64,000 bases of DNA from the IMG/VR virus record IMGVR_UViG_3300022602_000024, positions 124,001 to 188,000 of that record; one strand, 5' to 3'. Of this stretch, positions 2,200-61,911 are shown piece by piece. The notes under the pieces are model-generated. The model did not search any database, was not told the DNA's origin, and saw only the letters and a program-made list of their open reading frames with translations. How positions within the stretch are numbered: position 1 is the stretch's first letter; each line of letters starts with the position of its first letter. A program made the translations under genes and the position numbers.

Positions 2200-2223
2200 A
2201 AGGTCTCCTTAGTTGAAAATGTT

Positions 2224-2252
2224 ATTATATACTAGTTTATTTGATATTGCAA
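2224..2252 (-). promoter_or_regulatory. Sigma70-type promoter TTGCAA-17-TATAAT
   Basis: -35 at 2247-2252, -10 at 2224-2229, 17-bp spacer, upstream of ORF starting 2199. Confidence 0.7.
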
Positions 2253-2267
2253 GACTATTTTGGAATT

Positions 2268-2359
2268 AATGCTCACTTTAGGGGTCTTTGGGCACGACTC
2301 CTATCAACCCTGGCCAGCAGCCGGCCACACCGTAACACAAGGTCACTAAGGTAGGTGTT
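2268..2359 (-). ncRNA. Candidate structured RNA, family not recognised
   Basis: GC-rich intergenic block with stems ACACC/GGUGU, GUGAC/GUUAC, UGGCCGG/CUGGCCA, GGGUU/GACCC; G.U pairs work on minus strand. Confidence 0.5.
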
Positions 2360-4312: not shown

Positions 4313-4318
4313 AATATG

Positions 4319-4332
4319 TATTTATATAAATA
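4319..4332 (-). promoter_or_regulatory. T4-late-type promoter TATAAATA (palindromic, present on both strands)
   Basis: tatttatataaata 7 bp upstream of the amidoligase ATG. Confidence 0.6.
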
Positions 4333-4336
4333 TCTA

Positions 4337-4446
4337 GTGCCGTTGCAATACGGATAGATGAAGATTTGAAAAACCTGGGGACTTTCCGTATCTTGCCCCT
4401 GGGCAACAACGAATTGGCAGGCGAGTTTCATTAATCATCGCGGCAC
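4337..4446 (-). ncRNA. Candidate structured RNA, family not recognised
   Basis: Outer stem GTGCCG/CGGCAC (4337-42 / 4441-46), inner ATACGGA/TCCGTAT (4348-54 / 4385-91), hairpin TTGCCC/GGGCAA (4393-4406). Confidence 0.45.
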
Positions 4447-4452
4447 ACTGTT

Positions 4453-6417
4453 TCATAAATTAATCTGCGGTGATTTACCAACCCAGCGTGAATCTCTAAT
4501 AATGGTTCCTACTTTAAAGTAGTTATCATCTACTTTGCGTACACCCATAGTGATCCAATTGTCATTACGGGTATCAGTAAATGCATATCCAGTACCATTG
4601 GGTTTGTCTTTAAAATATCTTAGTCCGCGATTCAACATGGCTGCACAGGCTTCCATCAATTGTTCAACCGTCATTCTGGAGCCTCTATTCAATTTGATTT
4701 GATCAAAAAAGTGCTTGGTAAACTCTAATTTAATACCCTTGGCATGGGCAAAGTGTTGTGTAGCTGTTGTCACTAGTTGTAGTTTGCGCATCAGTTCTTC
4801 GGTATAATAGGGATCAACTTCCCAGTCACTGTGTTCGTGAATCTTTTTAGCCTTGCCGGCTTTCATGTTGGCCAACCAATGTGCCATGCGTTGTTTTTCG
4901 CCTGTACTGTGTTTGGCAACATTTCTTAATGTACTTACGCTGGCTTTGGTATTAACGCCTGAACGTTTAGCAAGTCCTTTGCGTCCGGGATGTTTACCAT
5001 CAGCAAAGTTTTCTGCCACACCTTGCTTAACGAATTGAACGTTTAATTTGGCATTCTTCCACAACGGATTCTTAGGATCCATTCTTTGTTGTAGCAACCA
5101 TATAGCGGATACTCTGTGTGCCCCATCTTCAAACTTGCCGTTTAACACTATTATTGGATCGAGTTGGGCTAATGACTCTGGATGTTTTTTAAAATACTCA
5201 GCATACTCTATTGCCTTTTCAGTTACGTTCCAACTGTGGTAATCTTTAGCGTCCCAATCATCAACTACATTGTTATAGTAAGGCACACCGGGTATAGATG
5301 ATATAATCTGGCCTACAGTCATTTTGCGAGTTGTTATCTTTGCATCGGACGCAAATGGTTTAGGCTTACCAGAACTTGGTCCCGGTTGTGGGACACCATC
5401 GGCAAAGTTTTCCCATACATTTTTACCCGGCTTGTGCTTGTCCCAAAAGCCAGCACCAGCATCAGTCTGTTGACCACTGCGGCGAATTTTATATCCTTTG
5501 CTCTTTACGTAGTCATACATTGTTTTAGCAATACCTTGACTACGATAGCGTTCGTCAACTTCCAAGTCCTGTGGTAATAATTCATCACCATCAAAGGCAA
5601 ATAATACATGACCTAACTCACGACCATTACTACTTGCAGTAACATACATTACTTGGTTATCATAATCGTCATCATCAACGTATTCATCATCTTTTTGTAT
5701 TTCAATATTGATATCTATACCATTAAATGCTTCTTCTTCTAAACTTTCGCCACGATAAGGACGTACCCAAGAGAAACGTGTGCTGGCCGGAATCCACTTT
5801 AATCCTAAACCGCGATTGCCTTTGGCTGGATCAGTGTCAATCAACAACCAGTCTTTTTCATCGCTAAACTTTACTTCGTGTTGCCGACGAATAATACGCA
5901 CAATCTTGCCTGTGCTTTCAATCTTGGCCATCATGGCAGGCTCTGTGTCTTCATCTAGGAATGTGCTGGCAATCTTACGACACAGATTTTTTAACTTTTC
6001 ATTCTTTGTTTCTACTACGCGGAAACGTGCTGAACTGGTATCTTGTGTGGGATCAATGTATCCACAGTATACACGTTTAATACCTACTCCGTGTAAAAAT
6101 CGACTGCAACTTTCGTCATGGCGATCATCCATTGCTTCACTGCAAGGACTCAATGTTGTAATGACTGTAGATCCTGGGGGAACAGGACCGTTTTCACTAA
6201 CGTAAGCATTGACAGCTACACGTTCAGCGTGTATGCGCTTGCCCTCTGAATCGGGCAAGTTAATACCGCAAACTTCTACTCCGTTGGGATCTAACACACA
6301 AGCTGCTACGCAACCATATGTGTCTTCATCACGTTCTTGTCCAGAAATGACCATTTCGCATAACCTGGCCAGTATGCGATCTAAATGTTCTGTACTGAGT
6401 ATTTCTTTAGTCTGCAT
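4453..6417 (-). CDS. Modular polyprotein: Zn-dependent deaminase + small domain + GNAT + ParB-like + basic module + FTKHF C-terminal domain
   Basis: HAE..TTLSPC..C deaminase motif; RYRSQGIAKTMY GNAT motif A; PIIVLNGKFEDGAHR ParB-like; junctions VWENFADG and GVAENFADG. Confidence 0.7.
   Translation of the reverse strand: MQTKEILSTEHLDRILARLCEMVISGQERDEDTYGCVAACVLDPNGVEVCGINLPDSEGKRIHAERVAVNAYVSENGPVPPGSTVITTLSPCSEAMDDRHDESCSRFLHGVGIKRVYCGYIDPTQDTSSARFRVVETKNEKLKNLCRKIASTFLDEDTEPAMMAKIESTGKIVRIIRRQHEVKFSDEKDWLLIDTDPAKGNRGLGLKWIPASTRFSWVRPYRGESLEEEAFNGIDINIEIQKDDEYVDDDDYDNQVMYVTASSNGRELGHVLFAFDGDELLPQDLEVDERYRSQGIAKTMYDYVKSKGYKIRRSGQQTDAGAGFWDKHKPGKNVWENFADGVPQPGPSSGKPKPFASDAKITTRKMTVGQIISSIPGVPYYNNVVDDWDAKDYHSWNVTEKAIEYAEYFKKHPESLAQLDPIIVLNGKFEDGAHRVSAIWLLQQRMDPKNPLWKNAKLNVQFVKQGVAENFADGKHPGRKGLAKRSGVNTKASVSTLRNVAKHSTGEKQRMAHWLANMKAGKAKKIHEHSDWEVDPYYTEELMRKLQLVTTATQHFAHAKGIKLEFTKHFFDQIKLNRGSRMTVEQLMEACAAMLNRGLRYFKDKPNGTGYAFTDTRNDNWITMGVRKVDDNYFKVGTIIRDSRWVGKSPQINL
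5011..5025 (-). repeat. GVAE linker repeat, variant CAAGGTGTGGCAGAA
   Basis: In frame within 4453..6417; one synonymous change from the core repeat. Confidence 0.75.
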
Positions 6418-6790
6418 GCTTCAACCCAAAGTATTCAGGATTGGCTTGAGCAAAGTCACGCATGATGATGCCGGCATTGCTGTTGGCTTCGTTTTCTTCT
6501 GGGGTACCAGTTTCGCCAGCACCGTCGTACAACTTGCCCTCTAAGTCTTGCTTGTAGTGTGTGAGTTCGTGTGCTAGTGTTCTTAATACATCAACAGGAT
6601 GACGACCAGCAACCACCAGTTCAATAGACTTGGTGTTGGGATTATATCCGCCAAAACTGGTGTCTACAGGGCGTGCTAATAATTTAATAGGAGGCAATTT
6701 TTCCAGCTCTAATCGTTCGGCTACCCAAGGGGCAAACCGATGAACAAACTGCTTGGCCATGCCTTCAATTAAAAAATCACTTGCTCTCAT
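6407..6790 (-). CDS. HEXXH zincin-like metallopeptidase domain protein with leader MRASDFLIE
   Basis: LRTLAHELTHYKQ motif. Confidence 0.6.
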   Translation of the reverse strand: MRASDFLIEGMAKQFVHRFAPWVAERLELEKLPPIKLLARPVDTSFGGYNPNTKSIELVVAGRHPVDVLRTLAHELTHYKQDLEGKLYDGAGETGTPEENEANSNAGIIMRDFAQANPEYFGLKHAD

Positions 6791-7142
6791 TCAAAATCCA
6801 CGTCTGTGCCGATTCTAACAATTGTTGTAATTCTTCTACACTCTCACAATGCCATTTACGCAATGACTTGTTGATACGGCTATTTGGATCATGTGCAGTT
6901 TTTGCACTAGTACGACTCTTTTTCATGCCCTTCATACGTGCGCAGAAACTGGCACGACGTTTGGCAGCTTTTGATCCTTTTTTCAGTTTACTGGGTTTAG
7001 TAGTTACAGCAGTCTGTAGTTTGCTACCAGGATGTTCTTTACGATAACTGGCAACACCTTTTTTGTTCAGTCCGCCGTTTTTGTTCTTGCCTGATTTTTT
7101 CTGCCAGGCTGCAGTTTCTGTGACAATTTCTTCAAATTTCAT
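6777..7142 (-). CDS. Basic phage protein with leader MKFEEIVTE
   Basis: Start moved to 7142 for ATGA overlap with the dps stop; Lys/Arg-rich AAWQKKSGKN..RRASFCARM. Confidence 0.65.
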   Translation of the reverse strand: MKFEEIVTETAAWQKKSGKNKNGGLNKKGVASYRKEHPGSKLQTAVTTKPSKLKKGSKAAKRRASFCARMKGMKKSRTSAKTAHDPNSRINKSLRKWHCESVEELQQLLESAQTWILNESK

Positions 7143-15740: not shown

Positions 15741-16472
15741 TTATTTAGCAGGTGGTACTACCAACTCATGAATATTTGTTACCAAACCTGGGCTTATAAG
15801 GTTCAAAAACGTAACAATAGACAAATCATTGGCGTAGAAGTACAGACTCCACATATAACCACTGGTTGATTGTAGTGCTCTACTTAATCCCCCAGTCATT
15901 TTAACTATTTCTTTGTCGGCTGAATTAAAATAATTCCACAACTGTTGTCTTGTTTCCCCGGGATAAAATCCATCTTTGAGTATTATTTTGTATCGGTATC
16001 CATTGTCAGTTTTTTTAATAATGGCACCAGAATTTAAAATTTCAGCAATAAAAGAATCTTCGGGTCCTGCAAGACCATGAGTATATTTTTTAAACAACAC
16101 GGGTGCTTGATCTACAATCTCTACTAGATCGTCTTCGGACTCTGTGTAGATTTGAATCCATGGTTCCTCTACTCGAATACGTGTATTGATAGTACGATCC
16201 TGCTTGAGTTGACGAATATGTTCTAAAAACTCAATATCGGCAGCTTCTAGGTCACGAGTTCTGCGACCCCACCAGCCAAAATGATTCATGTCTCGGTCCC
16301 AGACCTTTCGATGTTCAATAGTGCTCTCAATATCTTTGCTGTCAATGGCACGTCCACCAGGGGCATAAACCACAAGTTTGTAAAGATACTGATTAAAGTA
16401 TTTTTTAGTAGTGTGGGCTATTTCAATCTTAGGATTGAACTGAGTCCAGAACAATATATCCATTTGAATCAA
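15741..16472 (-). CDS. Hypothetical protein
   Basis: 243-aa ORF downstream of clpA. Confidence 0.6.
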   Translation of the reverse strand: MIQMDILFWTQFNPKIEIAHTTKKYFNQYLYKLVVYAPGGRAIDSKDIESTIEHRKVWDRDMNHFGWWGRRTRDLEAADIEFLEHIRQLKQDRTINTRIRVEEPWIQIYTESEDDLVEIVDQAPVLFKKYTHGLAGPEDSFIAEILNSGAIIKKTDNGYRYKIILKDGFYPGETRQQLWNYFNSADKEIVKMTGGLSRALQSTSGYMWSLYFYANDLSIVTFLNLISPGLVTNIHELVVPPAK

Positions 16473-18717
16473 TCATAGGTGAGGTTGGTGTAAATGGTCC
16501 CAACACATTGAATTTAAATTCTTTGTCAAAATCAACTTCTATAACGGTATTTACAGGCACATTTTCAAAAAGTATTTTTTTACTAAGTGGGACTTTAATC
16601 AAATCATTGATCTTACGTCCTAGGGGTCTAGCACCCATTTTGGCATCGTATCCTACTTCTGCCAAGTGATCTACCGCAGTTTCTGTAACACGAATACGAA
16701 TAGACTTTTCGCTAAGTAATTCATTAATTTCATTAATGAATTTACCGACAATTTTCTTGATACTCATGTTATCTAGTTTGTTAAACTTGCAAATACCGTC
16801 TAAACGATTACGAAACTCAGGTCTAAAGAAGTCTTTAACAGCCTTGTCGTCTTCGTCGGTTTTTTGTAATGCAGTACTAAATCCAATAGTATTGCGTTCA
16901 TTGTCGCTGGCACCCAAGTTACTAGTAAGAATAACAATGGCATTACGAGCATCAGCTTTTTTGCCATTACTGCTGGTAATCATACCTTCGTCCATTAAGG
17001 CCAGCAGGATGTTGGTAACGTCTGGGTGTGCTTTTTCAACTTCGTCGAATAAAATAATACAGTTAGGATTCTTTTCGATATCACTAATCAACATACCGCC
17101 ACCTAAGTTGCTGTCATCGTAGCCTACATAGCCCGGGGGTGCACCGATCAGTTTTGCAACTGTATGCTTTTCTTGATATTCACTCATGTCATAGCGTAAC
17201 AGTTTCATACCCATGCCTTCAGCCAATAACTTGGCCAATTCTGTTTTACCAGTACCTGTTGGGCCTAGAAACAAATAACTACCCACAGGCTTGTCCGGAC
17301 TCTTGAGTCCGGCACGAGCAACATAGATCTTTTCCAACACAGTATCTACTACTGTGTCTTGTCCGTACAACTTGTTTTTAATTGTTTCTTCCAGTCCTAC
17401 TAAGCTCTTGGTTGATTCGTTACCAATTTGTTCCACAGGAATCTTGGTAAACTTACTGATAATGTCTACAATATTGCTCTTACGTACAGTCCATCCCATA
17501 GCATTGATTTTTAACTTGGCGGCTGCAGTATCAATCAAGTCAATGGCTTTGTCAGGCAAACGTTTGTCTGGTTGATAACGCACACTTAAATCTACTGCAG
17601 ATTCAATAGCATCGTCACTGATATTGCCACCATGAAACTCTTCAAAATACTCACGTAGTCCACGTAAGATTTCTTTGGCAGTTGCTGGAGTAGGTTCTTC
17701 TACTGTTAGTCTACAGAATCTGCGCATTAGGGCACGATCTTTTTCAAAACTTTGTGTATATTCTTCCCATGTGGTCGAAGCAATAACTTTGATTTGTCCT
17801 TTGGTCAATGCAGGTTTAATCATGTTAGCAAAGTCTACACTTGATCCACCACTGCCAGCACCTGCACCACGCATTTGATGTGCTTCGTCAATGAACAATA
17901 TACATTTGCCTTTGGTTTGTAATGCACCAATAACGTCTTTGAACTTTTCTTCAAACTCGCCACGATACTTACTACCAGCAAGCAATGATCCGATATCTAG
18001 ATTGTAAACGACATAATCACGCAGGTAACCGGGAACTTCACCATTGACAATGTTACGTGCCAGGCCTTCGGCAATGGCAGTCTTACCTACTCCAGCATCT
18101 CCTACTAGTAATACATTTGATTTATTGCGTTTAGCTAATACCTGTGCTATTTCGTCTAGTTCAAATTCACGTCCCACTACAGGGTCAATACGACCTTCAC
18201 GTGCTTGTACATTTAAGTTTTCGCAATGTTCTTTTAGTATTTCGTCGGCACGAGCACTCATAGTACCACGGCGTGGTTTGGTTTCAACATAGTAACTGTT
18301 GTAGAACTCAACTACTGAGCTACGCTCCATTCCGTATTTGACAAAGAAGTAACTAGCGTAACTATTTGTTTCTCCAGCAAGACTCAAAAAGATATCGACA
18401 ATCTGTACATGATGGCGACCGCTAAACAGGACTTGTGTAAGTGCACGATTAAACACACGTTCTAAACTGTGTGTTTTCTTTGGAACACAATCTGCTTCGT
18501 TACTGACCAAATAAGTTTGTTTATTTAAATAGTCTTCTATATCATTCAGTAACCCAACAGTATCTACACCAAATGCAGTCATCAGGTCATTAAATGGTTT
18601 AAAGGTCATTAAGCCGTGTGTGAGATGCTCTAGCGTAACATACTCATGATTATATTTTTTTGCAATGTCTGTGGCATTGGCAATAACGACTTCAATTTCG
18701 GGATTGTGTTGTATCAT
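16429..18717 (-). CDS. clpA: Clp/Hsp100 ATPase, ClpA-like
   Basis: N-domain, Walker A GDAGVGKT and GPTGTGKT, FIDEAH, LIGAPPGYVG, FRPEFRNR, GARPL; no ClpB middle domain seen. Confidence 0.9.
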   Translation of the reverse strand: MIQHNPEIEVVIANATDIAKKYNHEYVTLEHLTHGLMTFKPFNDLMTAFGVDTVGLLNDIEDYLNKQTYLVSNEADCVPKKTHSLERVFNRALTQVLFSGRHHVQIVDIFLSLAGETNSYASYFFVKYGMERSSVVEFYNSYYVETKPRRGTMSARADEILKEHCENLNVQAREGRIDPVVGREFELDEIAQVLAKRNKSNVLLVGDAGVGKTAIAEGLARNIVNGEVPGYLRDYVVYNLDIGSLLAGSKYRGEFEEKFKDVIGALQTKGKCILFIDEAHQMRGAGAGSGGSSVDFANMIKPALTKGQIKVIASTTWEEYTQSFEKDRALMRRFCRLTVEEPTPATAKEILRGLREYFEEFHGGNISDDAIESAVDLSVRYQPDKRLPDKAIDLIDTAAAKLKINAMGWTVRKSNIVDIISKFTKIPVEQIGNESTKSLVGLEETIKNKLYGQDTVVDTVLEKIYVARAGLKSPDKPVGSYLFLGPTGTGKTELAKLLAEGMGMKLLRYDMSEYQEKHTVAKLIGAPPGYVGYDDSNLGGGMLISDIEKNPNCIILFDEVEKAHPDVTNILLALMDEGMITSSNGKKADARNAIVILTSNLGASDNERNTIGFSTALQKTDEDDKAVKDFFRPEFRNRLDGICKFNKLDNMSIKKIVGKFINEINELLSEKSIRIRVTETAVDHLAEVGYDAKMGARPLGRKINDLIKVPLSKKILFENVPVNTVIEVDFDKEFKFNVLGPFTPTSPMIDSNGYIVLDSVQS

Positions 18718-54284: not shown

Positions 54285-54539
54285 CTATCCTACAACTGGA
54301 GTGTTGTATTTTAGCAAAAAATAAGTGGCGTCTTCATCACTCAAGTTGGCAGTGATATGCACACGATATCCGTAGCCCATATGGTCAAATCCAATGGTCC
54401 ATGAGGGTTCGGGACGACTATGAGCCATAACCCATTGTCCCATTTTGGTTTGTTGCCATTGGTAAATTGGCTCAGCGGCATAGATTTCAGGATCTTCCGA
54501 GTCACTCATTCTAAAACTGTGTACTGTAATTCTTTTCAT
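54285..54539 (-). CDS. Small protein, F-L-x-W/Y C-terminal family
   Basis: DATYFLLKY. Confidence 0.55.
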   Translation of the reverse strand: MKRITVHSFRMSDSEDPEIYAAEPIYQWQQTKMGQWVMAHSRPEPSWTIGFDHMGYGYRVHITANLSDEDATYFLLKYNTPVVG

Positions 54540-54802
54540 CGTGAATACTTTAATAAAAATACCATATATTTCTGTTCATCCACGATATCTACTTCTCGAC
54601 TTATATTTCCAATATAATCCGCATCAGAGAATTTCAACCGTATGCCGTAGGTATCTCGGAAAAATGCAAACATTCCCGCATTGGTTTCGCAGGCCGCAGC
54701 ACCTTCGGTTTTTCGGCATTGACTCATCATAGACCAAAATCGGTAATCGCCTAACACAGTATTTAGGCGTTGGTCGTGGTCTTTGTACAGGTCATTCGTC
54801 AT
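54536..54802 (-). CDS. Small protein, F-L-x-W/Y C-terminal family
   Basis: KYMVFLLKYS. Confidence 0.55.
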   Translation of the reverse strand: MTNDLYKDHDQRLNTVLGDYRFWSMMSQCRKTEGAAACETNAGMFAFFRDTYGIRLKFSDADYIGNISREVDIVDEQKYMVFLLKYSR

Positions 54803-55155: not shown

Positions 55156-55770
55156 TTATTTTAATGTAATAGGACCAACTTGTTTTAAAAAATCTGCAAC
55201 ATCATCATAATGGTTAAAAAACTTAAATTGCAGTATTTCTCTATGTCCCTTGGACCATATTTCGTGTGGATGCGATGTGTTAAGTAACCATGCATGATTT
55301 AATGTTGATGGGTATGACTCATAATATGAATCTTCATTGGAATCGTATACAATAGTTTTTGCTAGTTGGTCTTCAGACGACACAATATAATTGATTTTGC
55401 ATTGAGGTAAACTATATTCCTCTGAAATTTTAGCATCAACATGCCGAGTAACATCAGCAATGGTATCACTCCATATAACCATACCAAAATTTAGTGGTTT
55501 AAATATTTCAACCACTTGTTTATGCCATGGTAATAATCTATTAAGTATAGGACCGCTCAATGAGCCCCAATTTGGACTTAGACGTTGACTTAGCATTAGT
55601 GATCCATGCCGGTCTAAATTATATTGTGTGCCGCCCCATTCGTCAACTTCTATCAAATCGTGGTCCAACTTACCAAGTTTTTGTTTATCAAACACAGTAC
55701 GATATAATGCCCTGATACTATCCCAATTTTGTTCTATTGTTATATTCACCGGACAACATAGTTTATTCAT
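55156..55770 (-). CDS. Possible 2OG-Fe(II)/DSBH-fold protein
   Basis: RHVD..CKINY..AWLLNTSHPH..REILQF. Confidence 0.45.
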   Translation of the reverse strand: MNKLCCPVNITIEQNWDSIRALYRTVFDKQKLGKLDHDLIEVDEWGGTQYNLDRHGSLMLSQRLSPNWGSLSGPILNRLLPWHKQVVEIFKPLNFGMVIWSDTIADVTRHVDAKISEEYSLPQCKINYIVSSEDQLAKTIVYDSNEDSYYESYPSTLNHAWLLNTSHPHEIWSKGHREILQFKFFNHYDDVADFLKQVGPITLK

Positions 55771-56052
55771 ACGTCATTCTTTCTAAGCAACATAAAGATC
55801 TTAGCAGCAGCCCAACAGAGTGCCACAAACCCAATGGTTGCACAAACCGTACGTACTACTTCTTCGGTCAGTGTGATTGTGATATGTAAATCAGGTGTTA
55901 TCATTTTTGTCTTCCTTTATGTGTTGTTTAAAATACTGTACCCATTCGTATAAAATACGATTCTGTTCTTCCAGTTGCTCTACTCGCTTGGTCAATGCAA
56001 TTATACGCTCTTCCTGCGACATGTCAACCAGGAATTCTAATACACTCATCAT

Positions 56053-56292
56053 TCAACTCCATTTTAAAATTCTAAATGTCCATAGAGGACTATTAGAATC
56101 AATATCAAACCATAACTGGTTATTTTCAATCCAGACAGTTAGTCCTTTTTGACTGAAATATTCTTGCCCGAATTCCAATAATCTCGGACGGTCGTTACAA
56201 TATTTTTTTCCCTTATTATGAAATTCAACTAGATATTCGGCTATCAAAAAATTTGTAAACCAAGAAGGGCAAGTGTTAAATGGAAATTTCAT
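56053..56292 (-). CDS. Small hypothetical protein
   Basis: Ends FRILKWS; ATGA coupling. Confidence 0.5.
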   Translation of the reverse strand: MKFPFNTCPSWFTNFLIAEYLVEFHNKGKKYCNDRPRLLEFGQEYFSQKGLTVWIENNQLWFDIDSNSPLWTFRILKWS

Positions 56293-56483
56293 TGTTCAAT
56301 TCCGAAATGTTCTCTAATCTCATCGCCCATAGTCCCGCCACCATCTTTCCGTTCACGCAAGATGTTATCTACTCGGCCGGCACATTCCTGGACCAGCAAC
56401 TCGGCCAATTGTTGAGCACGCCCGGCCAACTCTGGAGCCGCATAGCCAGCCTCCAGCATCAATTTTCTTAGGTTTTCGTTCAT
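56289..56483 (-). CDS. MNER-FAELIV-HFGVE family small protein
   Basis: MNENLRKL..LAELLVQEC..EHFGIE. Confidence 0.7.
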   Translation of the reverse strand: MNENLRKLMLEAGYAAPELAGRAQQLAELLVQECAGRVDNILRERKDGGGTMGDEIREHFGIEQ

Positions 56484-56596
56484 CGTCCATCCTTAGCATC
56501 ATTATAGCCCATCAAATAACCCATCACCAAAGCAAACAACATACCCGCAATAGCAATGGCTGTGCCAATGATTGGTCCCAAATTAAATTCATTCAT
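56480..56596 (-). CDS. Small membrane peptide (38 aa)
   Basis: MNEFNLGPIIGTAIAIAGMLF..; coupled to neighbours. Confidence 0.5.
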   Translation of the reverse strand: MNEFNLGPIIGTAIAIAGMLFALVMGYLMGYNDAKDGR

Positions 56597-56765
56597 GCCG
56601 GTCCTTTTCCCAAGGGGTAAATTCGTATCTGTAAAAGGGTAACAGGCCAAACAACCATGTACCAACCTTTACTTGTTTTAATTCTCTATGCTCAACTTCG
56701 GGCCGGTATTGGTCTGGGGTATTTCTAATTCTCGTGAAGTCATCTTGGAAATTTGTTAGATTCAT
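56589..56765 (-). CDS. Small hypothetical protein (58 aa)
   Basis: Manual translation MNLTNFQDDF..WEKDRHE; ATG overlaps upstream stop. Confidence 0.45.
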   Translation of the reverse strand: MNLTNFQDDFTRIRNTPDQYRPEVEHRELKQVKVGTWLFGLLPFYRYEFTPWEKDRHE

Positions 56766-56983
56766 CATTCAACTCCGTAAGATTCTTTAATGGCGTCAAT
56801 CATTTTTTCACAAGCACGGTCATACCCAATAACATAATGTGTATCAGTTGCTGGTTTTCCTCTAACCTCAAAGGCAATGTCTAAACAGTCTCTGACAATC
56901 AACTCGGCGAACTTTTGAATTTCACTGCCAGCAAGAACTACACCACCTGCTTTTTCTGCTAACTCTTTTACTCTTGGATTCAT
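56765..56983 (-). CDS. MNER-FAELIV-HFGVE family small protein
   Basis: MNPRVKELA..KFAELIVRDC..SYGVE. Confidence 0.7.
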   Translation of the reverse strand: MNPRVKELAEKAGGVVLAGSEIQKFAELIVRDCLDIAFEVRGKPATDTHYVIGYDRACEKMIDAIKESYGVE

Positions 56984-57168
56984 TTTTGATCCTTTAAGGT
57001 AATATGCTCAATGATGCCTTTTACTTTATCAGTGGTAATATCTGATAATTGATTAAATGTAAAATGACCTAGCCCAACCTCGTGTAATACTGCGGTGCGT
57101 TGGATAGCATTGGCATTTAATTTGTCCAGGACTTCATTCAATAGTTTTTCTTCATTTGGATTTTTCAT
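56980..57168 (-). CDS. Small hypothetical protein
   Basis: ORF track; ATGA coupling. Confidence 0.5.
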   Translation of the reverse strand: MKNPNEEKLLNEVLDKLNANAIQRTAVLHEVGLGHFTFNQLSDITTDKVKGIIEHITLKDQK

Positions 57169-57626
57169 TTTACACCTTTTATTTTACAGTTATCACCGTG
57201 CCAGCGTTTGTAGTTGGGCACATTAGCAGTATTACCACAATGTGGGCAAGTCATTGTTTCACGCATTGTTTGAGCACCTTTGTTGCGAGCAGGATCTTTC
57301 ATTGCCGCACTATGATCGGGCCTCTCAACTCCTAATGCTTTTAAGTTTGGAACACCTTTTCGTGCTTTACTAATCTTATCTCCAAAACCCTCAGGTTTAG
57401 CAACTCCGGGCCTGCCAATCTGCGGCAACGCCTTGCCTTTGTTAGGATGTTCTTTCCCGGCCATTGAGTTCTTCTCGCCACTCATACGGGCACTTTGGTC
57501 TGCTCTCTTACGCCCTGTAAGTTTTTCTGCCTGCCGGGCATTTCCTATAATTTTTTTATCACTAACATTATGTTTTTTGCTAGATTGTAAGTCCCGCATC
57601 ATTTTATCAAAATCTTTTTTATTCAT
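57165..57626 (-). CDS. NUMOD3-like repeat DNA-binding protein with CPHC..WHGDNC tail
   Basis: RMSGEKNSMAGK, KISKARKG; start moved to 57626. Confidence 0.6.
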   Translation of the reverse strand: MNKKDFDKMMRDLQSSKKHNVSDKKIIGNARQAEKLTGRKRADQSARMSGEKNSMAGKEHPNKGKALPQIGRPGVAKPEGFGDKISKARKGVPNLKALGVERPDHSAAMKDPARNKGAQTMRETMTCPHCGNTANVPNYKRWHGDNCKIKGVK

Positions 57627-57627
57627 A

Positions 57628-58500
57628 TTAAGCCTTTTGTTTTTCCCAACGGGCACGATAATCTTTTTTGTTTGGATACTTTGCCATATAACGCCATAAC
57701 TTATCCTCAACAAATCTTACACTTGTTTCTTTAGCATTTGTCCAGTTATCCCATAGCCAATCTAGCATCTCTGCTTTTTGTTCTTCTGTTGCCCCTGGGC
57801 ACATTGTTGTGTTCCAAACAACATCAGCAATCCACCCCCAGTATGTCTCACGATCCATGAGCAAATCCTCGTAAGTGACTCGACTGTAAATAGCGTGCCT
57901 GTTATTCAACGGAATCCATTTTGGACTTCCAGCAGGATATTGTGCTAAATCTTGAGCCGTGGCCAATGGAGTATTCATTGTAAAAATAAACTTTACTCTA
58001 CCATTAAATGGAATAACAAATCCAGTTCTTGTTGGGTCAAGGTCTTTCCAGTGCTGAATTGCGGCTTGTTCAATTTCTTCTGCCTGAGTAACCTGACTTC
58101 CTAAACTTGTGTTATATTCTAAACGATCACCAGAATTCTTATCCATAGCAATCTTAAACATATCTAAAAAGCCTTTGCTTGGTGTAAATAAATCATTCAT
58201 ATCATCAATGTATACTGCCAAGAATTCATTAGGTTGTAACAAATAAACACCAACTGCAATACTTTTAACAAACGCCCAGGGTTTCATATCACCTTTAAGC
58301 GTAATCATTTTTGTATTTTTTTGGTCTGCGGTGTCTTCCACAGTCCAACTTTTTCCAACACCCGGTTGGCCAGCAATGTATAAATTATGGTCTTGGTCGT
58401 CAAAAAATTCATCTACTGCACTAACAAAAAGACGCCTATAATCTTGCCCTTTTAGTAAAAATGCTTGATGTTGTGCCCCAAAATAGTCAGAAAAAGACAT
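57628..58500 (-). CDS. P-loop (AAA-like) ATPase
   Basis: IAGQPGVGKS; VYIDD; FIFTMN. Confidence 0.65.
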   Translation of the reverse strand: MSFSDYFGAQHQAFLLKGQDYRRLFVSAVDEFFDDQDHNLYIAGQPGVGKSWTVEDTADQKNTKMITLKGDMKPWAFVKSIAVGVYLLQPNEFLAVYIDDMNDLFTPSKGFLDMFKIAMDKNSGDRLEYNTSLGSQVTQAEEIEQAAIQHWKDLDPTRTGFVIPFNGRVKFIFTMNTPLATAQDLAQYPAGSPKWIPLNNRHAIYSRVTYEDLLMDRETYWGWIADVVWNTTMCPGATEEQKAEMLDWLWDNWTNAKETSVRFVEDKLWRYMAKYPNKKDYRARWEKQKA

Positions 58501-58529
58501 TTTACTTTCCTTTAGTTAAACAATAAGTT

Positions 58530-58558
58530 ATTATAGCATTATTCGGATTTTGAGTCAA
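58530..58558 (-). promoter_or_regulatory. Sigma70-type promoter TTGACT-17-TATAAT
   Basis: Exact spacing upstream of the ATPase. Confidence 0.75.
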
Positions 58559-58754
58559 GACCCCAGTGTTGTAAAACCACAACAGGGTCACTACACAATA
58601 AGGCACATTCCCGCACAATCAACTCGGCGAACTTTTTGTAATCTTCTAATCTTGGATACTTAAAATCACCATCGTTTATATTAGATTCATTTGTCATCCA
58701 GTTGTGATAATTTAATCCAGCCTCATCAGCAAGTTGTCGAATTCGTTCGTTCAT
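58539..58754 (-). CDS. MNER-FAELIV family small protein, variant C-terminus
   Basis: MNERIRQLA..KFAELIVRECA. Confidence 0.7.
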   Translation of the reverse strand: MNERIRQLADEAGLNYHNWMTNESNINDGDFKYPRLEDYKKFAELIVRECALLCSDPVVVLQHWGLDSKSE

Positions 58755-58757
58755 TCT

Positions 58758-58871
58758 TCAACTCCGAAATGTTCTTTTAAGTATATTACTAATGCCAACA
58801 AATACAAAAATAATTGGCAAAACTAATAAACCAATAACGACCATCCACCAAGGCATATCTCGTTCGTTCAT
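58758..58871 (-). CDS. 37-aa membrane peptide with MNER start and family terminal DNA read in a shifted frame
   Basis: Manual translation MNERDMPWWMVVIGLLVLPIIFVFVGISNILKRTFRS. Confidence 0.6.
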   Translation of the reverse strand: MNERDMPWWMVVIGLLVLPIIFVFVGISNILKRTFRS

Positions 58872-59119
58872 GGATTATTCCCAAAATAAGTGCTACGGTT
58901 TCTCAGTTGTTGATTAATACCGGATTCTTCAACTCCGAAATGTTTCAACAAAAATTCTAAATCAGGATGTCCTCTATGAAAGGCAGTATCAATACATTCT
59001 TTCACAATCAACTCGGCGAACTTTTCTTTGTCAAAGACTTCAATGTCGTGTTTTCCTTCAACGAGCACTTCTTTGTATGAAGTGGCCTGTTCAGCAAGTT
59101 CTTTAATTCGTTCGTTCAT
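58868..59119 (-). CDS. MNER-FAELIV-HFGVE family small protein
   Basis: MNERIKELA..KFAELIVKEC..KHFGVEE plus extension. Confidence 0.7.
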   Translation of the reverse strand: MNERIKELAEQATSYKEVLVEGKHDIEVFDKEKFAELIVKECIDTAFHRGHPDLEFLLKHFGVEESGINQQLRNRSTYFGNNP

Positions 59120-59361
59120 AGTTCAACTCCAAAATGTTTTTTCATGTCTTCGTAAGTAAAGTCAATGGCTCGATCCCATTCAACACCATCCCCATTGCCC
59201 CCTCCAAGTTGTTTTTCAACAACTTCCATACATTCCCGAACAATCAACTCGGCAAACTTGTCCTTTAGTATTGATAACTGAGAATGGGTCAGTGTAGTCC
59301 AAGTTTCTGGTATAGATTGATCCATAGCCTGTCCAAATAGTTTATTGATTCGTTCGTTCAT
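59116..59361 (-). CDS. MNER-FAELIV-HFGVE family small protein
   Basis: MNERINKL..KFAELIVREC..KHFGVEL. Confidence 0.7.
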   Translation of the reverse strand: MNERINKLFGQAMDQSIPETWTTLTHSQLSILKDKFAELIVRECMEVVEKQLGGGNGDGVEWDRAIDFTYEDMKKHFGVEL

Positions 59362-59403
59362 AGTCTGACTCCTTGTATGTATTATAGCACATTTTTTGTA
59401 TCG

Positions 59404-59658
59404 TTACCCCCAACGTAGCAGAAAAGCCACAAGATCTTGTTCATCTTTGAACTCAAATATGCCTTCGCTGACAAAACGCCAGCGTGATGGACTGTCGTGT
59501 GAACGCATTTCGCCAAATTGGTGCGTACACCATTCCAAACAGGGTCGCCAGCCTTGATATCTGTACTTGCCGTTGATGGTTTCGTCTGTTGGCGGTGCCA
59601 CACTGGCCACGTGCCATCGACTCAATTTGTTCATCATAGCCACATCAAACTGAACCAA
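59404..59658 (-). CDS. Small protein, WC..F-L-x-W family
   Basis: EWCTHQFG..FEFKDEQDLVAFLLRWG. Confidence 0.6.
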   Translation of the reverse strand: MVQFDVAMMNKLSRWHVASVAPPTDETINGKYRYQGWRPCLEWCTHQFGEMRSHDSPSRWRFVSEGIFEFKDEQDLVAFLLRWG

Positions 59659-59888
59659 ACCGCCGATTTTTCTTCGGCAAAGTAAAAGGTTGTATTACGA
59701 AAATTCGCATTCCAATGCCAAGGTCTATCATCGTCAACTGTGTCTTTGGTTGGTGCTTCCTTACCAATGTTACGACAACACCAATCTACCATCCTGGAGA
59801 TTTTTAGGCCCGATACAGTCACTTGGGCCGCTATCATGCCCACTTTAACAAAAATGCAGTCATATCTTCGGGAGTCCGAAACCGCCAC
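59634..59888 (-). CDS. Small protein, WC..F-L-x-W family
   Basis: DWCCRNIG..FYFAEEKSAVWFSLMW. Confidence 0.6.
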   Translation of the reverse strand: MAVSDSRRYDCIFVKVGMIAAQVTVSGLKISRMVDWCCRNIGKEAPTKDTVDDDRPWHWNANFRNTTFYFAEEKSAVWFSLMWL

Positions 59889-60121
59889 ATGTTGAAACTG
59901 ATCCTAATACCGCAACCAGTTTCTTTACTCCATTCATGTATAGGGTCCATGTCTGATTCGTTCAAGCCCATTTCCAAGCCACGTGGACCCGGAGTCCAGT
60001 TTGCCCGCAGTTTAAATCCAGGTAGTCTTTCCCATTCTATCTTAATCGGTTTTCTTGCCATATTGTACTTTCCACCATTAAATTCTCTGCAAAACTTTTC
60101 TGAAAACGCAATCATAGCCAC
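59834..60121 (-). CDS. Small protein, WC..F-L-x-W family
   Basis: EWSKETG..WRFRTPEDMTAFLLKWA. Confidence 0.6.
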   Translation of the reverse strand: MAMIAFSEKFCREFNGGKYNMARKPIKIEWERLPGFKLRANWTPGPRGLEMGLNESDMDPIHEWSKETGCGIRISFNMWRFRTPEDMTAFLLKWA

Positions 60122-60342
60122 CTTAACGAAAACAATACAAAGGTCTGTTCATCTGGCAGTTCCACAGTCATGCCCACCACTTGGCCTTGATGTAGTCGAC
60201 ACCATTCTTCAAGTTCATGGTAGTGATCAATCCAATAGGCCGTATCTGTTAAGACCAATATGATGTTTTCGCTTTCCACATACACATTGTTGGCAACAAC
60301 AAACCGAACATTTTTCCAACTCTCAAATACATCTTCATTCAC
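60112..60342 (-). CDS. Small protein, WC..F-L-x-W family
   Basis: EWCRLHQG..PDEQTFVLFSLRW. Confidence 0.6.
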   Translation of the reverse strand: MNEDVFESWKNVRFVVANNVYVESENIILVLTDTAYWIDHYHELEEWCRLHQGQVVGMTVELPDEQTFVLFSLRWL

Positions 60343-60646
60343 GATCTAAATACCTTAAGCGGAACCAAGTTTCTTTGGCATCATCATAAAAGTCCAAACA
60401 AACAACATCCTTGTGGATATTCTCCCTGTGGAACTTACGATTCTGTTCAGTATCATGCCAAATATTATCACTGCGGTCGTAGTCATCGAGCTCTTGGGCT
60501 GTTCTGGGTGTGTATCCCGAATGTCTGCGGACAGTAAAGCCTAACTCACGCCGCATGACGTCACGAATCAGCAGGTGACTCGGTGGCCAATCCTTGGCAA
60601 GGCGATTGTAAATATCGGCCCATTCTTTATCGTTTAGCGTGACCAT
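60335..60646 (-). CDS. Small protein, F-L-x-W/Y family
   Basis: LDFYDDAKETWFRLRY. Confidence 0.55.
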   Translation of the reverse strand: MVTLNDKEWADIYNRLAKDWPPSHLLIRDVMRRELGFTVRRHSGYTPRTAQELDDYDRSDNIWHDTEQNRKFHRENIHKDVVCLDFYDDAKETWFRLRYLDRE

Positions 60647-60813
60647 CTCAGTGCAAAATGTGTAGCATGTTCAGGTTGTCGGAATTTGAATGTCCAATTC
60701 CAACTGGGGAATTGATTATCAATTGCAAAGTTTTCAAATCCAACGTGTTCTTGACACCATTGGATAGCATCATGAACACTGGTTTTACCATCTCTTATAG
60801 TTACAGTAGTCAT
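60634..60813 (-). CDS. Small protein (59 aa), WC..F-L-x-W family
   Basis: Manual translation ..QWCQEHVG..FKFRQPEHATHFALRW; directly after promoter. Confidence 0.6.
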   Translation of the reverse strand: MTTVTIRDGKTSVHDAIQWCQEHVGFENFAIDNQFPSWNWTFKFRQPEHATHFALRWSR

Positions 60814-60818
60814 ACTAT

Positions 60819-60847
60819 ATTATAACATATTTGTCTTTATTGGTCAA
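60819..60847 (-). promoter_or_regulatory. Sigma70-type promoter TTGACC-17-TATAAT
   Basis: Exact spacing; heads the small-gene array. Confidence 0.8.
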
Positions 60848-61353
60848 TCGCGTCGCAGTATATCCCAAGCACGCTTCTTTTCCAGGTATTCAGCCAATTT
60901 GGTTCGATATTCATCAGCCAGGTGCCGTAGTTCTTCAAAGTCATTTTCAAGTTCGGTATTGCGAACCAAAGTACTAGGAATTCGTAACTGCTCTTTGATT
61001 TCTTTCAGTGCATCCATTAGACTTTCGCCATTTACTCGAATGTCGGCGTTTTCGCCCTGTAATTCAATGGTACCACTGGGATGAGCCGCAATCGCAGTGG
61101 TTGCCCAAGAACTGGACCCATTACCAATCACATATGGATTGTAAGAATAACCGGGTGCAGCCCCTACGCTGAGTCCCCCGATCCCACCAGTATAGCCATA
61201 TGAGGCACTCATGCTGGCCAAGTCAATCGTAGCCCCTATGTCCGATATAGTGATAGTATCTACTGTGTCTGTATCTGTTGTTAAGGTTATGTTTGATGTA
61301 GTCATAAAAAAGCCTATACGGTTAAGTATAGGCAGTTTGTTGAGAGATGTCAA
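60844..61353 (-). CDS. Hypothetical protein
   Basis: ORF track; true start likely internal (MTTSNI). Confidence 0.55.
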   Translation of the reverse strand: MTSLNKLPILNRIGFFMTTSNITLTTDTDTVDTITISDIGATIDLASMSASYGYTGGIGGLSVGAAPGYSYNPYVIGNGSSSWATTAIAAHPSGTIELQGENADIRVNGESLMDALKEIKEQLRIPSTLVRNTELENDFEELRHLADEYRTKLAEYLEKKRAWDILRRD

Positions 61354-61362
61354 CTGTTTAGA

Positions 61363-61911
61363 TTAGAAACTAAAGCCAACACCTAAACCATATGCGTTCT
61401 CAGTAATAGTTTGGTAACTCTTACTTGCGTTGATGTTAACTGCAACACCTTTAGCAACTGGAATGCTGTATGTAGCATAAGCAACTGATTGCTTTGGATT
61501 TGTACTACCTGCGTCATTTACACGAGTTTTAGCACCGACCAATGCAAAACCAGGACCTGCTTTTACACCAACTTGTGCGCCAAGCAAACCGTAGTTGTAA
61601 TGACTTGTTGGTTTTCCGCTAACACCATTGTCGTAGCCTAGGCCAACGTATGGTTGAACGATACCGATGTTTTTACCAACTGTGGTTTCGATACTGGTGA
61701 ATGTACCGCCACCGCCTTGATAAACAGCAGTACGGTCTTGAATACCAAACTGTAAGCCGGCAATTTCTTTACCAGCACGTAAGTATTCGGCGGTGCTCAA
61801 CTGTTTAGTTGTTGTATCTCTAACGTGATCAATGTCAAAAGACAAATAGTCTGCAGCCATGCTAGTTACAGATGCTAGTGCAATCAAAGATGCAATTGCG
61901 ATTTTCTTCAT
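61363..61911 (-). CDS. Putative outer-membrane beta-barrel protein
   Basis: Sec signal MKKIAIASLIALASVTSMA; alternating beta strands; C-terminal GLGVGFSF. Confidence 0.7.
   Translation of the reverse strand: MKKIAIASLIALASVTSMAADYLSFDIDHVRDTTTKQLSTAEYLRAGKEIAGLQFGIQDRTAVYQGGGGTFTSIETTVGKNIGIVQPYVGLGYDNGVSGKPTSHYNYGLLGAQVGVKAGPGFALVGAKTRVNDAGSTNPKQSVAYATYSIPVAKGVAVNINASKSYQTITENAYGLGVGFSF

What the first reader, a model, noticed from the sequence alone, without database searches (positions are those of the whole stretch)
56289..59361. MNER-FAELIV-HFGVE gene array with DNA-conserved anchors and variable inserts
Seen: five paralogs keep three helical anchors but differ between them. A 21-bp sequence acaatcaactcggcgaacttt is exact at 56895, 58615, 59004 and near-exact at 59240; the terminal ttcaa(c/t)tcc(g/a)aaatgtt occurs at 56295, 58757, 58928, 59122; attcgttcgttcat starts three genes. 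Inference: a second recombination-diversified cassette system. The terminal motif also encodes the GGAG SD of the next gene, which may explain part of the conservation.
Basis: partly seen in the sequence, partly recalled or inferred. Interest (0 to 1): 0.65.

Follow-up and report, generated by a model that had tools for sequence, protein, structure and literature searches.

The report
Recombining small-gene family in lake phage
Five neighbouring small genes of a 354-kb T4-like lake phage belong to a very large, unnamed phage gene family; its three short conserved stretches are kept almost letter for letter as DNA, and natural phages have swapped gene halves and whole genes at exactly those stretches.

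Summary
Five minus-strand paralogs of 64-83 aa share a start block, a 20-22-nt mid block (peptide KFAELIV) and an end block. The segments between them are no more alike than shuffled DNA.

The window lies in a 354-kb T4-type freshwater phage. The family has at least 7,866 relatives, all unnamed, with no Pfam, PHROG or NCBIfam match. Models show small acidic three-helix proteins.

Across 76 independent viral contexts the three blocks use fixed, mostly rare codons. The exact 20-mer occurs in 63 of 119 KFAELIV members, against about 0.07% expected.

The end and start blocks together form a portable ribosome-binding region: GGAG, a spacer, then an ATGA stop/start overlap. This region also stands before non-family genes and is read out of frame.

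Natural contigs carry a gene made of the N half of g5 joined to the C half of g2, with the joint at the mid block. That form lacks 2.3 kb of the window. The g2 C module is found on 52 unrelated N modules.

Best reading: short DNA homology patches drive in-frame module and gene shuffling in a hyperplastic early region. This works like T4 PeSLs, but with one patch inside the gene. A programmed cassette system is not shown. Protein function is unknown.

The parts
59116..59361 (-). g5, family member, 81 aa, first gene behind the promoter
   Evidence: AF2 model has three helices (3-16, 26-52, 60-77), pLDDT 83.
58868..59119 (-). g4, family member, 83 aa. It reads 20 codons past its internal HFGVE block.
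   Evidence: The identical protein P0010 is in the public collection.
58758..58871 (-). 37-aa membrane-peptide ORF bounded by the start block and the terminal block, with the terminal block read out of frame
58539..58754 (-). g3, family member, 71 aa. The third anchor is replaced by promoter-bearing sequence.
58530..58558 (-). sigma-70-like promoter, TTGACT-17-TATAAT with upstream TG, inside the 3' end of g3
57628..58500 (-). P-loop ATPase-like ORF, 290 aa. Part of the 2.3 kb that is absent from the chimeric relatives.
57165..57626 (-). NUMOD3 and zinc-ribbon DNA-binding tail of a homing endonuclease, without a nuclease domain (153 aa from the ATG at 57626)
56980..57168 (-). 62-aa ORF of unknown function, within the segment absent from relatives
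56765..56983 (-). g2, family member, 72 aa. It carries the commonest C module of the family.
   Evidence: AF2 model has three helices (3-12, 20-41, 49-69), pLDDT 84.6.
56589..56768 (-). 59-aa ORF coupled to g2 by an ATGA overlap; conserved in L007-L010
56480..56665 (-). 61-aa membrane ORF; conserved in L007-L010
56289..56483 (-). g1, family member, 64 aa, with degenerate anchors (QLAELLV)
56053..56292 (-). 79-aa non-family ORF coupled to g1 by an ATGA overlap
59240..59260 (-). mid anchor of g5 (2 mismatches); left end of the 2.3-kb insertion/deletion
59004..59024 (-). mid anchor of g4 (exact)
58615..58635 (-). mid anchor of g3 (exact)
56895..56915 (-). mid anchor of g2 (exact); right end of the 2.3-kb insertion/deletion
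56392..56412 (-). degenerate mid anchor of g1 (core GCCGAGTTG kept)
59106..59138 (-). g5/g4 junction: end block, GGAG SD, ATGA overlap and start block, forming one translation-initiation cassette
58741..58773 (-). junction between the membrane-peptide ORF and g3; the same cassette, with the end block out of frame
58928..58944 (-). end block inside g4. About 55 nt of other sequence separate it from the next start block (58858-58871).
56295..56311 (-). end block of g1. It is the right boundary of the 96.5%-identical mosaic segment shared with L007-L010.
56768..56784 (-). variant end block of g2 (SYGVE). It is the right boundary of the segment shared with L011 and L012.
59348..59361 (-). start block of g5. 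It is the left boundary of the shared mosaic segment in all four foreign contexts.
59381..59389 (-). extended -10 promoter element (TGCTATAAT) upstream of g5

Best explanation
The array lies in a hyperplastic early-gene region of a 354-kb T4-type freshwater phage. Its five genes, plus a sixth elsewhere in the genome, belong to a very large uncharacterised family of small, acidic, three-helix phage proteins. The family is built as start block, variable 1, mid block, variable 2, end block.

The three blocks are conserved as DNA, not only as peptide.

The end block plus the next gene's start block form one portable translation-initiation cassette: GGAG, a 7-8-nt spacer, an ATG overlapping the TGA stop, then fixed first codons. 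This cassette chains small genes by translational coupling.

The mid block is an in-frame patch of 20-22 nt.

All three blocks act as short homology patches for homologous recombination, both between paralogs and between co-infecting related phages. Crossovers at the junction cassette move or delete whole genes. Crossovers at the mid block swap N and C modules in frame. Unequal crossovers between mid blocks of different paralogs insert or delete everything in between; in this window that is 2.3 kb, including an ATPase and an endonuclease remnant.

What is shown: the DNA-level conservation, the ribosome-binding role of the end block by its context, and natural recombinants whose boundaries lie at the blocks.

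What is inferred: that repeated exchange is what keeps the mid block identical as DNA; that the phage's own UvsX/RecA-like recombinase does the exchange; and that the proteins are early host-directed binders whose variable segments carry specificity.
For: Genome and family
- The phage has T4 Gp23 at E 7e-99 and a RecA/UvsX-like gene.
- All genes run on one strand, with sigma-70-like promoters at 59381-59389 and 58530-58558.
- Family size is at least 7,866 hits, all unnamed. Arrays reach 10 members per 8 kb in 86 loci.

Codon fixation in 76 independent contexts with GC 33-52%
- AAG 89% against 32% background; GCC 76% against 22%; GAG 86% against 25%; TTG 88% against 27%; CGA 90% against 13%; GGA 92% against 24%.
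- The exact 20-mer occurs in 63 of 119 KFAELIV members.
- The same holds for members not found through the search pattern: 32 of 66.
- Variable columns, and conserved G and D columns outside the blocks, show background codon use.

Translation-initiation cassette
- ATGA overlap in 194 of 237 downstream neighbours.
- The cassette occurs alone before non-family genes and out of frame at the ends of unrelated ORFs.

Recombinants
- L007-L012 carry window 59361-59240 (98.4% identity) joined at the anchor to window 56914-56287 (96.5%) or 56914-56762 (98.7%). Other shared genes are only 66-84% identical and lie elsewhere in the genome.
- The joint falls within about 5 nt at the anchor's 5' edge.
- Outer boundaries lie at the g5 ATG and at the g1 or g2 stop.
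- The g2 C module sits on 52 N clusters, and there are two four-gamete squares. The exact 41-aa module is in 30 of 120 top hits.
- Eight more recent half-gene swaps are seen at DNA level.

Other support
- In four lake metagenomes, summed word depth at the anchors is 1,000-7,000 against 1-6 over the unique parts.
- The solitary sixth copy encodes KFAELI with 6 synonymous changes but keeps the canonical end cassette.
Against: - Homologous recombination on only 20-22 nt is near the lower limit for RecA-type enzymes. This limit is from my own knowledge and was not tested here.
- The prediction that arrayed copies keep the canonical DNA better than solitary ones is not significant: 0.9 against 1.5 mismatches, with only 8 solitary copies, p = 0.2.
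- Recombination explains why the joints lie at the blocks. It does not by itself prove why one particular rare-codon string is fixed in 39 of 58 contexts. A sequence-specific function of the mid block is not excluded.
- No read-level evidence exists for ongoing exchange within this phage's own population. Only Logan contigs were available, and they break at the anchors.
- Protein function is unknown: there is no informative fold or family match.
Confidence: 0.7

Rival explanations
1. The mid block is conserved as DNA because it is itself a sequence-specific functional element. Candidates are a target of a homing or other nuclease, a protein-binding site, an RNA structure or a translational pause site. 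Recombination at the block would then be a by-product.
For: - One specific codon is fixed at each position, across contexts with GC from 33% to 52%.
- Conservation stops sharply at the third position of the Val codon.
- A homing-endonuclease remnant sits inside this array, and a full HNH-NUMOD3 endonuclease is encoded elsewhere in the genome.
Against: - No homolog of that endonuclease occurs in the 86 other array loci.
- No consistent RNA pairing of the mid block with the start or ribosome-binding region was found in 85 mRNAs; the highest mean pair probability was 0.06.
- There is no Rfam match.
- The block never occurs outside family ORFs, except in ORFs truncated at contig ends.
- The sixth copy keeps the peptide with 6 synonymous changes, so neither the protein nor its expression needs the exact string.
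- A pause-site reading would allow other rare codons, but GCG and CTG are almost absent.
Confidence: 0.2
2. Ordinary tandem duplication followed by divergence, with the three motifs kept only by selection on the protein.
For: - The motifs map to the three predicted helices.
- They are conserved as peptide in thousands of relatives.
Against: - Variable segments are at the shuffled-sequence level while the blocks are 82-88% identical.
- Synonymous sites in the blocks are fixed on rare codons. The exact 20-mer is found in 53% of members against about 0.07% expected.
- Conserved residues outside the blocks show background codon use.
- Chimeras have joints exactly at the blocks.
Confidence: 0.04
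3. A programmed diversification system, either pilin-like switching from silent cassettes to an expression site, or a retroelement-driven one.
For: Tandem copies with conserved DNA anchors and variable inserts look superficially like cassette loci.
Against: - Every copy has its own start codon and SD and a full reading frame.
- Two promoters drive the array.
- The genome has no reverse transcriptase.
- No recombinase or nuclease is recurrently next to the arrays.
- Variable parts are unrelated sequences, not mutated copies of a template.
Confidence: 0.03
4. The chimeric genes are metagenome mis-assemblies at the repeated anchors.
For: - Contigs often end at the arrays.
- Logan contigs break at the anchors.
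Against: - The same g5N/g2C joint occurs in six samples from two assembly pipelines, in four different flanks.
- The anchor is 21 nt, much shorter than the reads and the final assembly word size. This point is an inference from the contig names (k141).
- The chimeric ORFs are intact and in frame. Their downstream genes continue at 96-99% identity.
Confidence: 0.03

Closest known systems
PeSLs (promoter-early stem-loops), the mobile regulatory cassettes of T4-type phage hyperplastic regions (Arbiol et al. 2010, PMC2839356; Comeau et al. 2014, PMC4122927)
   Same: - Both occur in a T4-type phage, in a hyperplastic region of small non-essential early genes.
- Both are short conserved DNA motifs repeated between genes that have a regulatory role.
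- In both, insertions, deletions and replacements between related phages have their ends at the motifs.
   Different: - PeSLs are intergenic promoter-plus-terminator composites.
- Here the junction motif is a ribosome-binding and translational-coupling cassette that overlaps two coding ends.
- Here there is also a further anchor inside the reading frame, so half-genes are exchanged in frame.
- No stem-loop or promoter lies in the anchors.
T-even internal-protein (IP) locus, with diverse proteins sharing only a conserved capsid-targeting leader (Repoila et al. 1994, as cited in PMC3012670)
   Same: - A polymorphic set of small phage proteins keeps one short conserved N-terminal leader while the rest is unrelated.
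- From my own memory, not read here: that paper proposed exchange through the conserved flanks.
   Different: - The MNER leader here is not known to target anything. It coincides with a translation-initiation cassette.
- There are three anchors, not one.
- There is no evidence that these proteins are packaged.
Polymorphic toxin loci (CdiA-CT after the VENN motif, Rhs tips) with orphan cassettes
   Same: By established knowledge, a short conserved coding motif marks the point where variable C-terminal modules are exchanged by homologous recombination. The mid block plays that role here.
   Different: - These proteins are 64-83 aa with no delivery domain and no toxin or immunity signature.
- All copies are complete genes.
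- Both halves vary, not only the C-terminal one.
Conserved boundary or 'linker' sequences at gene junctions of lambdoid phages (modular theory of phage evolution; from my own knowledge)
   Same: Mosaic segment boundaries coincide with short conserved sequences at gene junctions.
   Different: The conservation here spans thousands of genes in many phage lineages, and it includes an intragenic in-frame anchor.

Membership tests
PeSL-type mobile regulatory cassettes | Composite of a strong sigma-70-like early promoter and a stem-loop terminator | tested here: not met
   The anchors hold no promoter or stem-loop. The promoters at 58530-58558 and 59381-89 lie outside the anchors. No consistent pairing of the mid block was found.
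PeSL-type mobile regulatory cassettes | Intergenic position between small genes of a hyperplastic region of a T4-type phage | tested here: inconclusive
   The T4-type phage and the small-gene region are confirmed. However, the junction cassette overlaps coding ends and the mid block is intragenic.
PeSL-type mobile regulatory cassettes | Insertions, deletions and replacements between related phages end in the motif | tested here: met
   The 2.3-kb insertion/deletion ends in two mid blocks. The outer boundaries lie at a start block and at end blocks.
Silent-cassette antigenic-variation loci (pilE/pilS type) | Promoterless or truncated donor copies plus one expression locus | tested here: not met
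   All five copies have an ATG, an SD and a full frame.
Diversity-generating retroelements | Reverse transcriptase with a template/variable repeat pair | tested here: not met
   The genome has no RVT_1 match. The variable parts are unalignable.
Homing-endonuclease target site | A nuclease gene recurrently next to, or inserted at, the conserved site | tested here: not met
   Only this array holds a nuclease-less NUMOD3 remnant. No homolog occurs in the 86 other loci. Cleavage itself cannot be tested with these tools.
Any curated protein family (Pfam, PHROG, NCBIfam, PDB) | Significant profile or fold match | tested here: not met
   No hit passes a threshold. Foldseek against PDB gives nothing with E below 1. 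VIA-align gives Z of 6.4 or less, all generic helical matches. BFVD matches only uncharacterised proteins of uncultured phages.
Polymorphic toxin cassettes (CDI/Rhs) | Large delivery domain, with toxin and immunity gene pairs | tested here: not met
   The proteins are 64-83 aa with no toxin or immunity family match. Downstream partners are diverse small ORFs.

The most novel reading that the evidence does not exclude
The three DNA blocks are evolved shuffling signals, a phage counterpart of exon shuffling. The string is kept identical across thousands of genes and many phage lineages because lineages that keep it can draw on a shared pool of N and C modules and of whole small genes. This would yield combinatorial libraries of early host-directed proteins. 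A stronger variant is that a dedicated enzyme recognises the mid block.
Probability: 0.25. Interest if true: 0.85.

Novelty: new variant of a known kind. Interest (0 to 1): 0.68.

Why it matters
Phage mosaicism is usually put down either to rare illegitimate joints sorted by selection or to intergenic linker motifs such as PeSLs.

Here a family of thousands of unannotated genes carries its own homology patches, and one of them lies in frame inside the gene. As a result, protein halves recombine like exons.

Synonymous-site fixation across 76 genomic contexts gives a clean, measurable signature of selection or exchange acting on DNA rather than on protein.

It also has a practical side. The arrays break metagenome assemblies, and a whole class of lake-phage early proteins has no name. 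These proteins are likely arms-race factors. The family offers a natural experiment on how short a homology patch can be and still sustain gene flow between phages.

Tried and rejected
- **Family scans.** Pfam, PHROG and NCBIfam scans of the five proteins gave nothing.
- **Cultured phages.** blastn and tblastn against 50,697 deposited phage genomes gave no match. No cultured carrier is therefore known from that collection.
- **Structure and feature searches.** PDB by sequence, Foldseek against PDB, VIA-align wide and the ESM Atlas by shape and by features gave only generic helical look-alikes or unnamed viral clusters.
- **Host inference.** A scan of 185,579 species' genomes gave only 14 hits. 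All are on freshwater MAG contigs from several phyla and are probably mis-binned phage DNA.
- **Chi-like hotspot.** The shared core GAGTTGA is only about 1.5-1.8 times over expectation genome-wide, so this idea was dropped.
- **Extra anchor-like site.** The site at genome 293593 is a chance match inside a GroES-like gene in another frame.
- **RNA explanations.** Rfam gave nothing. There is no conserved pairing of the mid block.
- **Homing-endonuclease linkage.** It is not recurrent.
- **Arrayed against solitary copies.** Too few solitary copies were available; the test is inconclusive.
- **Laying public runs.** Only Logan contigs were available. They fragment at the anchors, so the many 'joints' show only that the anchors are shared by very many sequences. 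They do not show live recombination in this phage.
- **Literature.** A full-text search for the peptide FAELIV found no relevant paper. Repoila et al. 1994 could not be read.
- **Not run.** It carries no names and would not settle function.


Full report
**1. What is in the sequence**

The stretch 56053-59361 is a run of short minus-strand ORFs. Five of them are paralogs:
- g1, 56289-56483, 64 aa
- g2, 56765-56983, 72 aa
- g3, 58539-58754, 71 aa
- g4, 58868-59119, 83 aa
- g5, 59116-59361, 81 aa

They share an N-terminal MNERI..LA..A block, a central KFAELIV(R/K)EC block and, in most, a C-terminal HFGVE block.

They occur nowhere else in the 354-kb genome, apart from chance look-alikes.

Divergence is not uniform. 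The blocks are 82-88% identical between paralogs. The two segments between them score 0.49 and 0.53, the same as shuffled sequence at 0.47 and 0.51.

- The terminal motif at 58757 closes a 37-aa membrane-peptide ORF (58758-58871). That ORF begins with the MNER block but reads the terminal motif in another frame.
- The motif at 58928 is internal to g4.
- g3 has no terminal motif. A sigma-70-like promoter (TTGACT-17-TATAAT with TG, 58558-58530) lies in its 3' end.

**2. Context**

The window is bases 124001-188000 of a 354,429-bp IMG/VR virus record with CheckV completeness of 98%.

- The genome encodes a T4-type major capsid protein (Gp23, E 7e-99) and a RecA/UvsX-like recombinase.
- It has no RecT, ERF or reverse transcriptase.
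- Nearly all genes of the window lie on the minus strand, at about 40% GC.
- An extended -10 element (TGCTATAAT) stands just upstream of g5, and the promoter in g3 precedes the next genes.

So the array sits in an early, hyperplastic small-gene region of a T4-like jumbo phage. Public runs that hold the stretch are lake and freshwater metagenomes.

Between g3 and g2 lie three further ORFs:
- a P-loop ATPase-like ORF;
- a 153-aa NUMOD3 plus zinc-ribbon protein, which is the DNA-binding tail of an HNH homing endonuclease without its nuclease domain; a complete HNH-NUMOD3 paralog lies at genome 283576-284394;
- a 62-aa ORF.

**3. The family**

A profile of the five proteins finds at least 7,866 clusters at E of 1e-3 or better among the 8,000 candidates scored. 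All are unnamed and none has a Pfam domain.

There is no match in Pfam, PHROGs, NCBIfam, PDB sequences or deposited phage genomes.

AlphaFold models of g2 and g5 are three-helix proteins with pLDDT of 84.6 and 83, and one block lies in each helix. Fold searches return only generic helical arrangements or uncharacterised proteins of uncultured tailed phages.

The proteins are acidic, with median pI 4.9 and median length 76 aa.

In 86 fetched viral loci I found 270 members, up to ten per 8 kb. The loci represent 76 independent genomic contexts with GC from 33% to 52%.

**4. The blocks are conserved as DNA**

Across those contexts the codons in the blocks are fixed, mostly on codons that are rare in the same phages.

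| Block | Codon | In the block | Background |
|---|---|---|---|
| Mid | AAG | 89% | 32% |
| Mid | TTC | 74% | 30% |
| Mid | GCC | 76% | 22% |
| Mid | GAG | 86% | 25% |
| Mid | TTG | 88% | 27% |
| Mid | ATT | 93% | 48% |
| Start | AAC | 86% | 41% |
| Start | CGA | 90% | 13% |
| End | GGA | 92% | 24% |
| End | GTT | 90% | 36% |

- The exact 20-mer is present in 63 of 119 members with the peptide KFAELIV, and in 39 of 58 contexts. The product of the background codon frequencies gives an expectation of about 0.07%.
- Members that were not found through the search pattern give the same result, 32 of 66. Sampling bias is therefore not the cause.
- Codon homozygosity equals background in the variable columns and at conserved Gly and Asp columns outside the blocks. 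It also falls to background at the third position of the Val codon that ends the mid block.
- In four lake metagenomes, summed contig word depth over the anchors is 1,000-7,000, against 1-6 over this phage's unique DNA. The same DNA strings therefore sit in very many other sequences in those lakes.

**5. The end and start blocks form a translation-initiation cassette**

The end block contains GGAG 7-8 nt before the next ATG. In 194 of 237 cases the next ORF overlaps the stop as ATGA.

The downstream gene is more often a non-family small ORF (167 cases) than a family member (70 cases). These partners are diverse, with median length 67 aa, and 24 of 135 have a membrane segment.

The end-block DNA also occurs:
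- alone in a 5' leader behind a promoter-like site, before non-family genes (L007 5733-5747 and L047 2694-2708);
- out of frame at the ends of unrelated ORFs that finish ...ETFRS* (two in L045, and window 58758-58871).

The conserved entity is therefore the DNA or RNA of the ribosome-binding region. The HFGVE peptide partly follows from it.

**6. Recombination at the blocks**

Public proteins are chimeras of the window's paralogs:
- P0001 is the N half of g5 joined to the C half of g2, residue for residue.
- P0011 carries the N variable segment of g3 on a g2-like C half.
- P0104 carries the N half of g1 on a g2-like C half.
- P0116 carries the C half of g5 on another N half.

At DNA level, contigs from six samples (L007-L012) carry window 59361-59240 at 98.4% identity. 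This is joined directly to window 56914-56287 at 96.5%, or to 56914-56762 at 98.7%.

The 2.3 kb between the mid blocks of g5 and g2 is absent from these contigs. That segment holds the C half of g5, g4, the membrane ORF, g3, the ATPase, the endonuclease remnant, the 62-aa ORF and the N half of g2.

The joint lies within about 5 nt at the 5' edge of the block. The outer ends of the shared segment fall at the g5 ATG and at the stop of g1 or g2, and the flanks are unrelated in each of four contexts.

Other genes shared between these phages and the window's genome are only 66-84% identical and lie elsewhere in the genome. The segment is therefore a recent transfer or is kept by exchange.

In L007 a further family member is followed by the homolog of the gene that follows the sixth copy in this genome.

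Family-wide evidence:
- The g2-type C module (at least 80% aa identity) is attached to 52 different N clusters, and there are two four-gamete squares.
- Its exact 41 residues are present in 30 of the 120 best hits.
- Among 202 members with DNA, there are about eight more pairs, besides the window's, in which one half is at least 93% identical and the other is unrelated. Some of these pairs lie within one array.

Mis-assembly is unlikely. The same joint recurs in two pipelines and four flanks, and the repeat is only 21 nt.

**7. Mechanism and its limits**

The best-supported reading is that the three blocks serve as short homology patches for homologous recombination, both among paralogs and between co-infecting relatives. 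I infer that the phage's own UvsX-like enzyme carries this out.

The junction cassette moves whole genes. The mid block exchanges N and C modules in frame.

The junction cassette has an independent function in translation that explains its conservation. For the mid block, repeated exchange is the leading explanation of the DNA identity.

A single observation fits this. The solitary sixth copy encodes KFAELI with six synonymous changes yet keeps the canonical end cassette. So neither the protein nor its expression needs the exact string.

The general prediction that arrayed copies are more canonical than solitary ones could not be confirmed. There were only 8 solitary copies, and p = 0.2.

A sequence-specific role of the mid block remains possible. 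Against it:
- no conserved RNA pairing;
- no Rfam family;
- no recurrent nuclease;
- fixation of one particular codon at each position rather than of any rare codon.

There is no sign of a programmed cassette system. All copies are complete genes, and there is no reverse transcriptase.

The function of the proteins is unknown. From their size, charge, early position and modular variability, I infer that they are host-directed binders whose variable segments carry specificity. My confidence in this is low.

**8. Comparison with what is known**

The closest described mechanism is the PeSL. PeSLs are conserved promoter-terminator cassettes in the hyperplastic regions of T4-type phages, and recombination at them produces insertions, deletions and replacements (PMC2839356, PMC4122927).

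The present case shares the phage type, the kind of region and the coincidence of breakpoints with the motifs. It differs in three ways:
- it lacks the defining promoter and stem-loop;
- its junction motif is a translational-coupling cassette that overlaps coding ends;
- it has an in-frame intragenic anchor that shuffles protein halves.

It also resembles the T-even internal-protein locus, where diverse proteins keep only a short conserved leader (PMC3012670). In concept it resembles the VENN and Rhs demarcation motifs of polymorphic toxins; that comparison rests on my own knowledge.

I rate it a new variant of a known kind, and the family itself appears undescribed. A full-text search for the peptide found nothing relevant.

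No genetic code other than table 11 was used.

Noticed in passing
window 59404-60813 and 54285-54802 (minus strand): A second family of eight small paralogs (59-103 aa) ends in an F-x-L-[RK]-[WY] motif. The ORFs are 59404-59658, 59634-59888, 59834-60121, 60112-60342, 60335-60646, 60634-60813, 54285-54539 and 54536-54802. None has a Pfam match.
   Followed up: partly
window 57165-57626; genome 283576-284394 (L107): A NUMOD3 plus zinc-ribbon protein without a nuclease domain sits inside the array. A complete HNH-NUMOD3 homing endonuclease and two more paralogs lie elsewhere in the genome.
   Followed up: yes
L007 5733-5747; L047 2694-2708; L045 1411-1425 and 3658-3672: The end-block DNA occurs as a stand-alone leader and ribosome-binding site before non-family genes. 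It also occurs out of frame at the ends of unrelated ORFs (...ETFRS*).
   Followed up: yes
L007-L012 contig ends; window 56200-59400 in runs X1, X2, X3, X5: Public contigs tend to end at or near these arrays, and Logan contigs fragment at the anchors. The family is therefore a systematic cause of assembly breaks in lake viromes.
   Followed up: partly
genome about 293,480-293,640 (outside the window): A GroES-like co-chaperonin ORF (MNLRPLQDRVIV...) is encoded by the phage. An anchor-like 21-mer with 3 mismatches lies in it by chance, in another frame.
   Followed up: partly
window 16429-18717: A 762-aa ATP-dependent protease matches phrog_4871 at E 1e-238. This is unusual cargo for a phage.
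   Followed up: no
window 56000-56027 (minus strand): A perfect TTGACA-16-TATAAT promoter consensus lies just downstream of the 79-aa ORF. Further near-perfect promoters are at 55618-55646, 60819-60847 and 61325-61353.
   Followed up: no
window 61363-61911 (minus strand): A 182-aa ORF has a signal peptide and a Gly/aromatic-rich pattern that looks like a small outer-membrane beta-barrel. It was not scanned against any family library.
   Followed up: no
P0009 (public protein, 117 aa): This variant of the g5/g4 junction has lost the TGA/ATG overlap. As a result g5 reads on through the g4 DNA in another frame, a natural inactivation of g4 at the junction cassette.
   Followed up: partly
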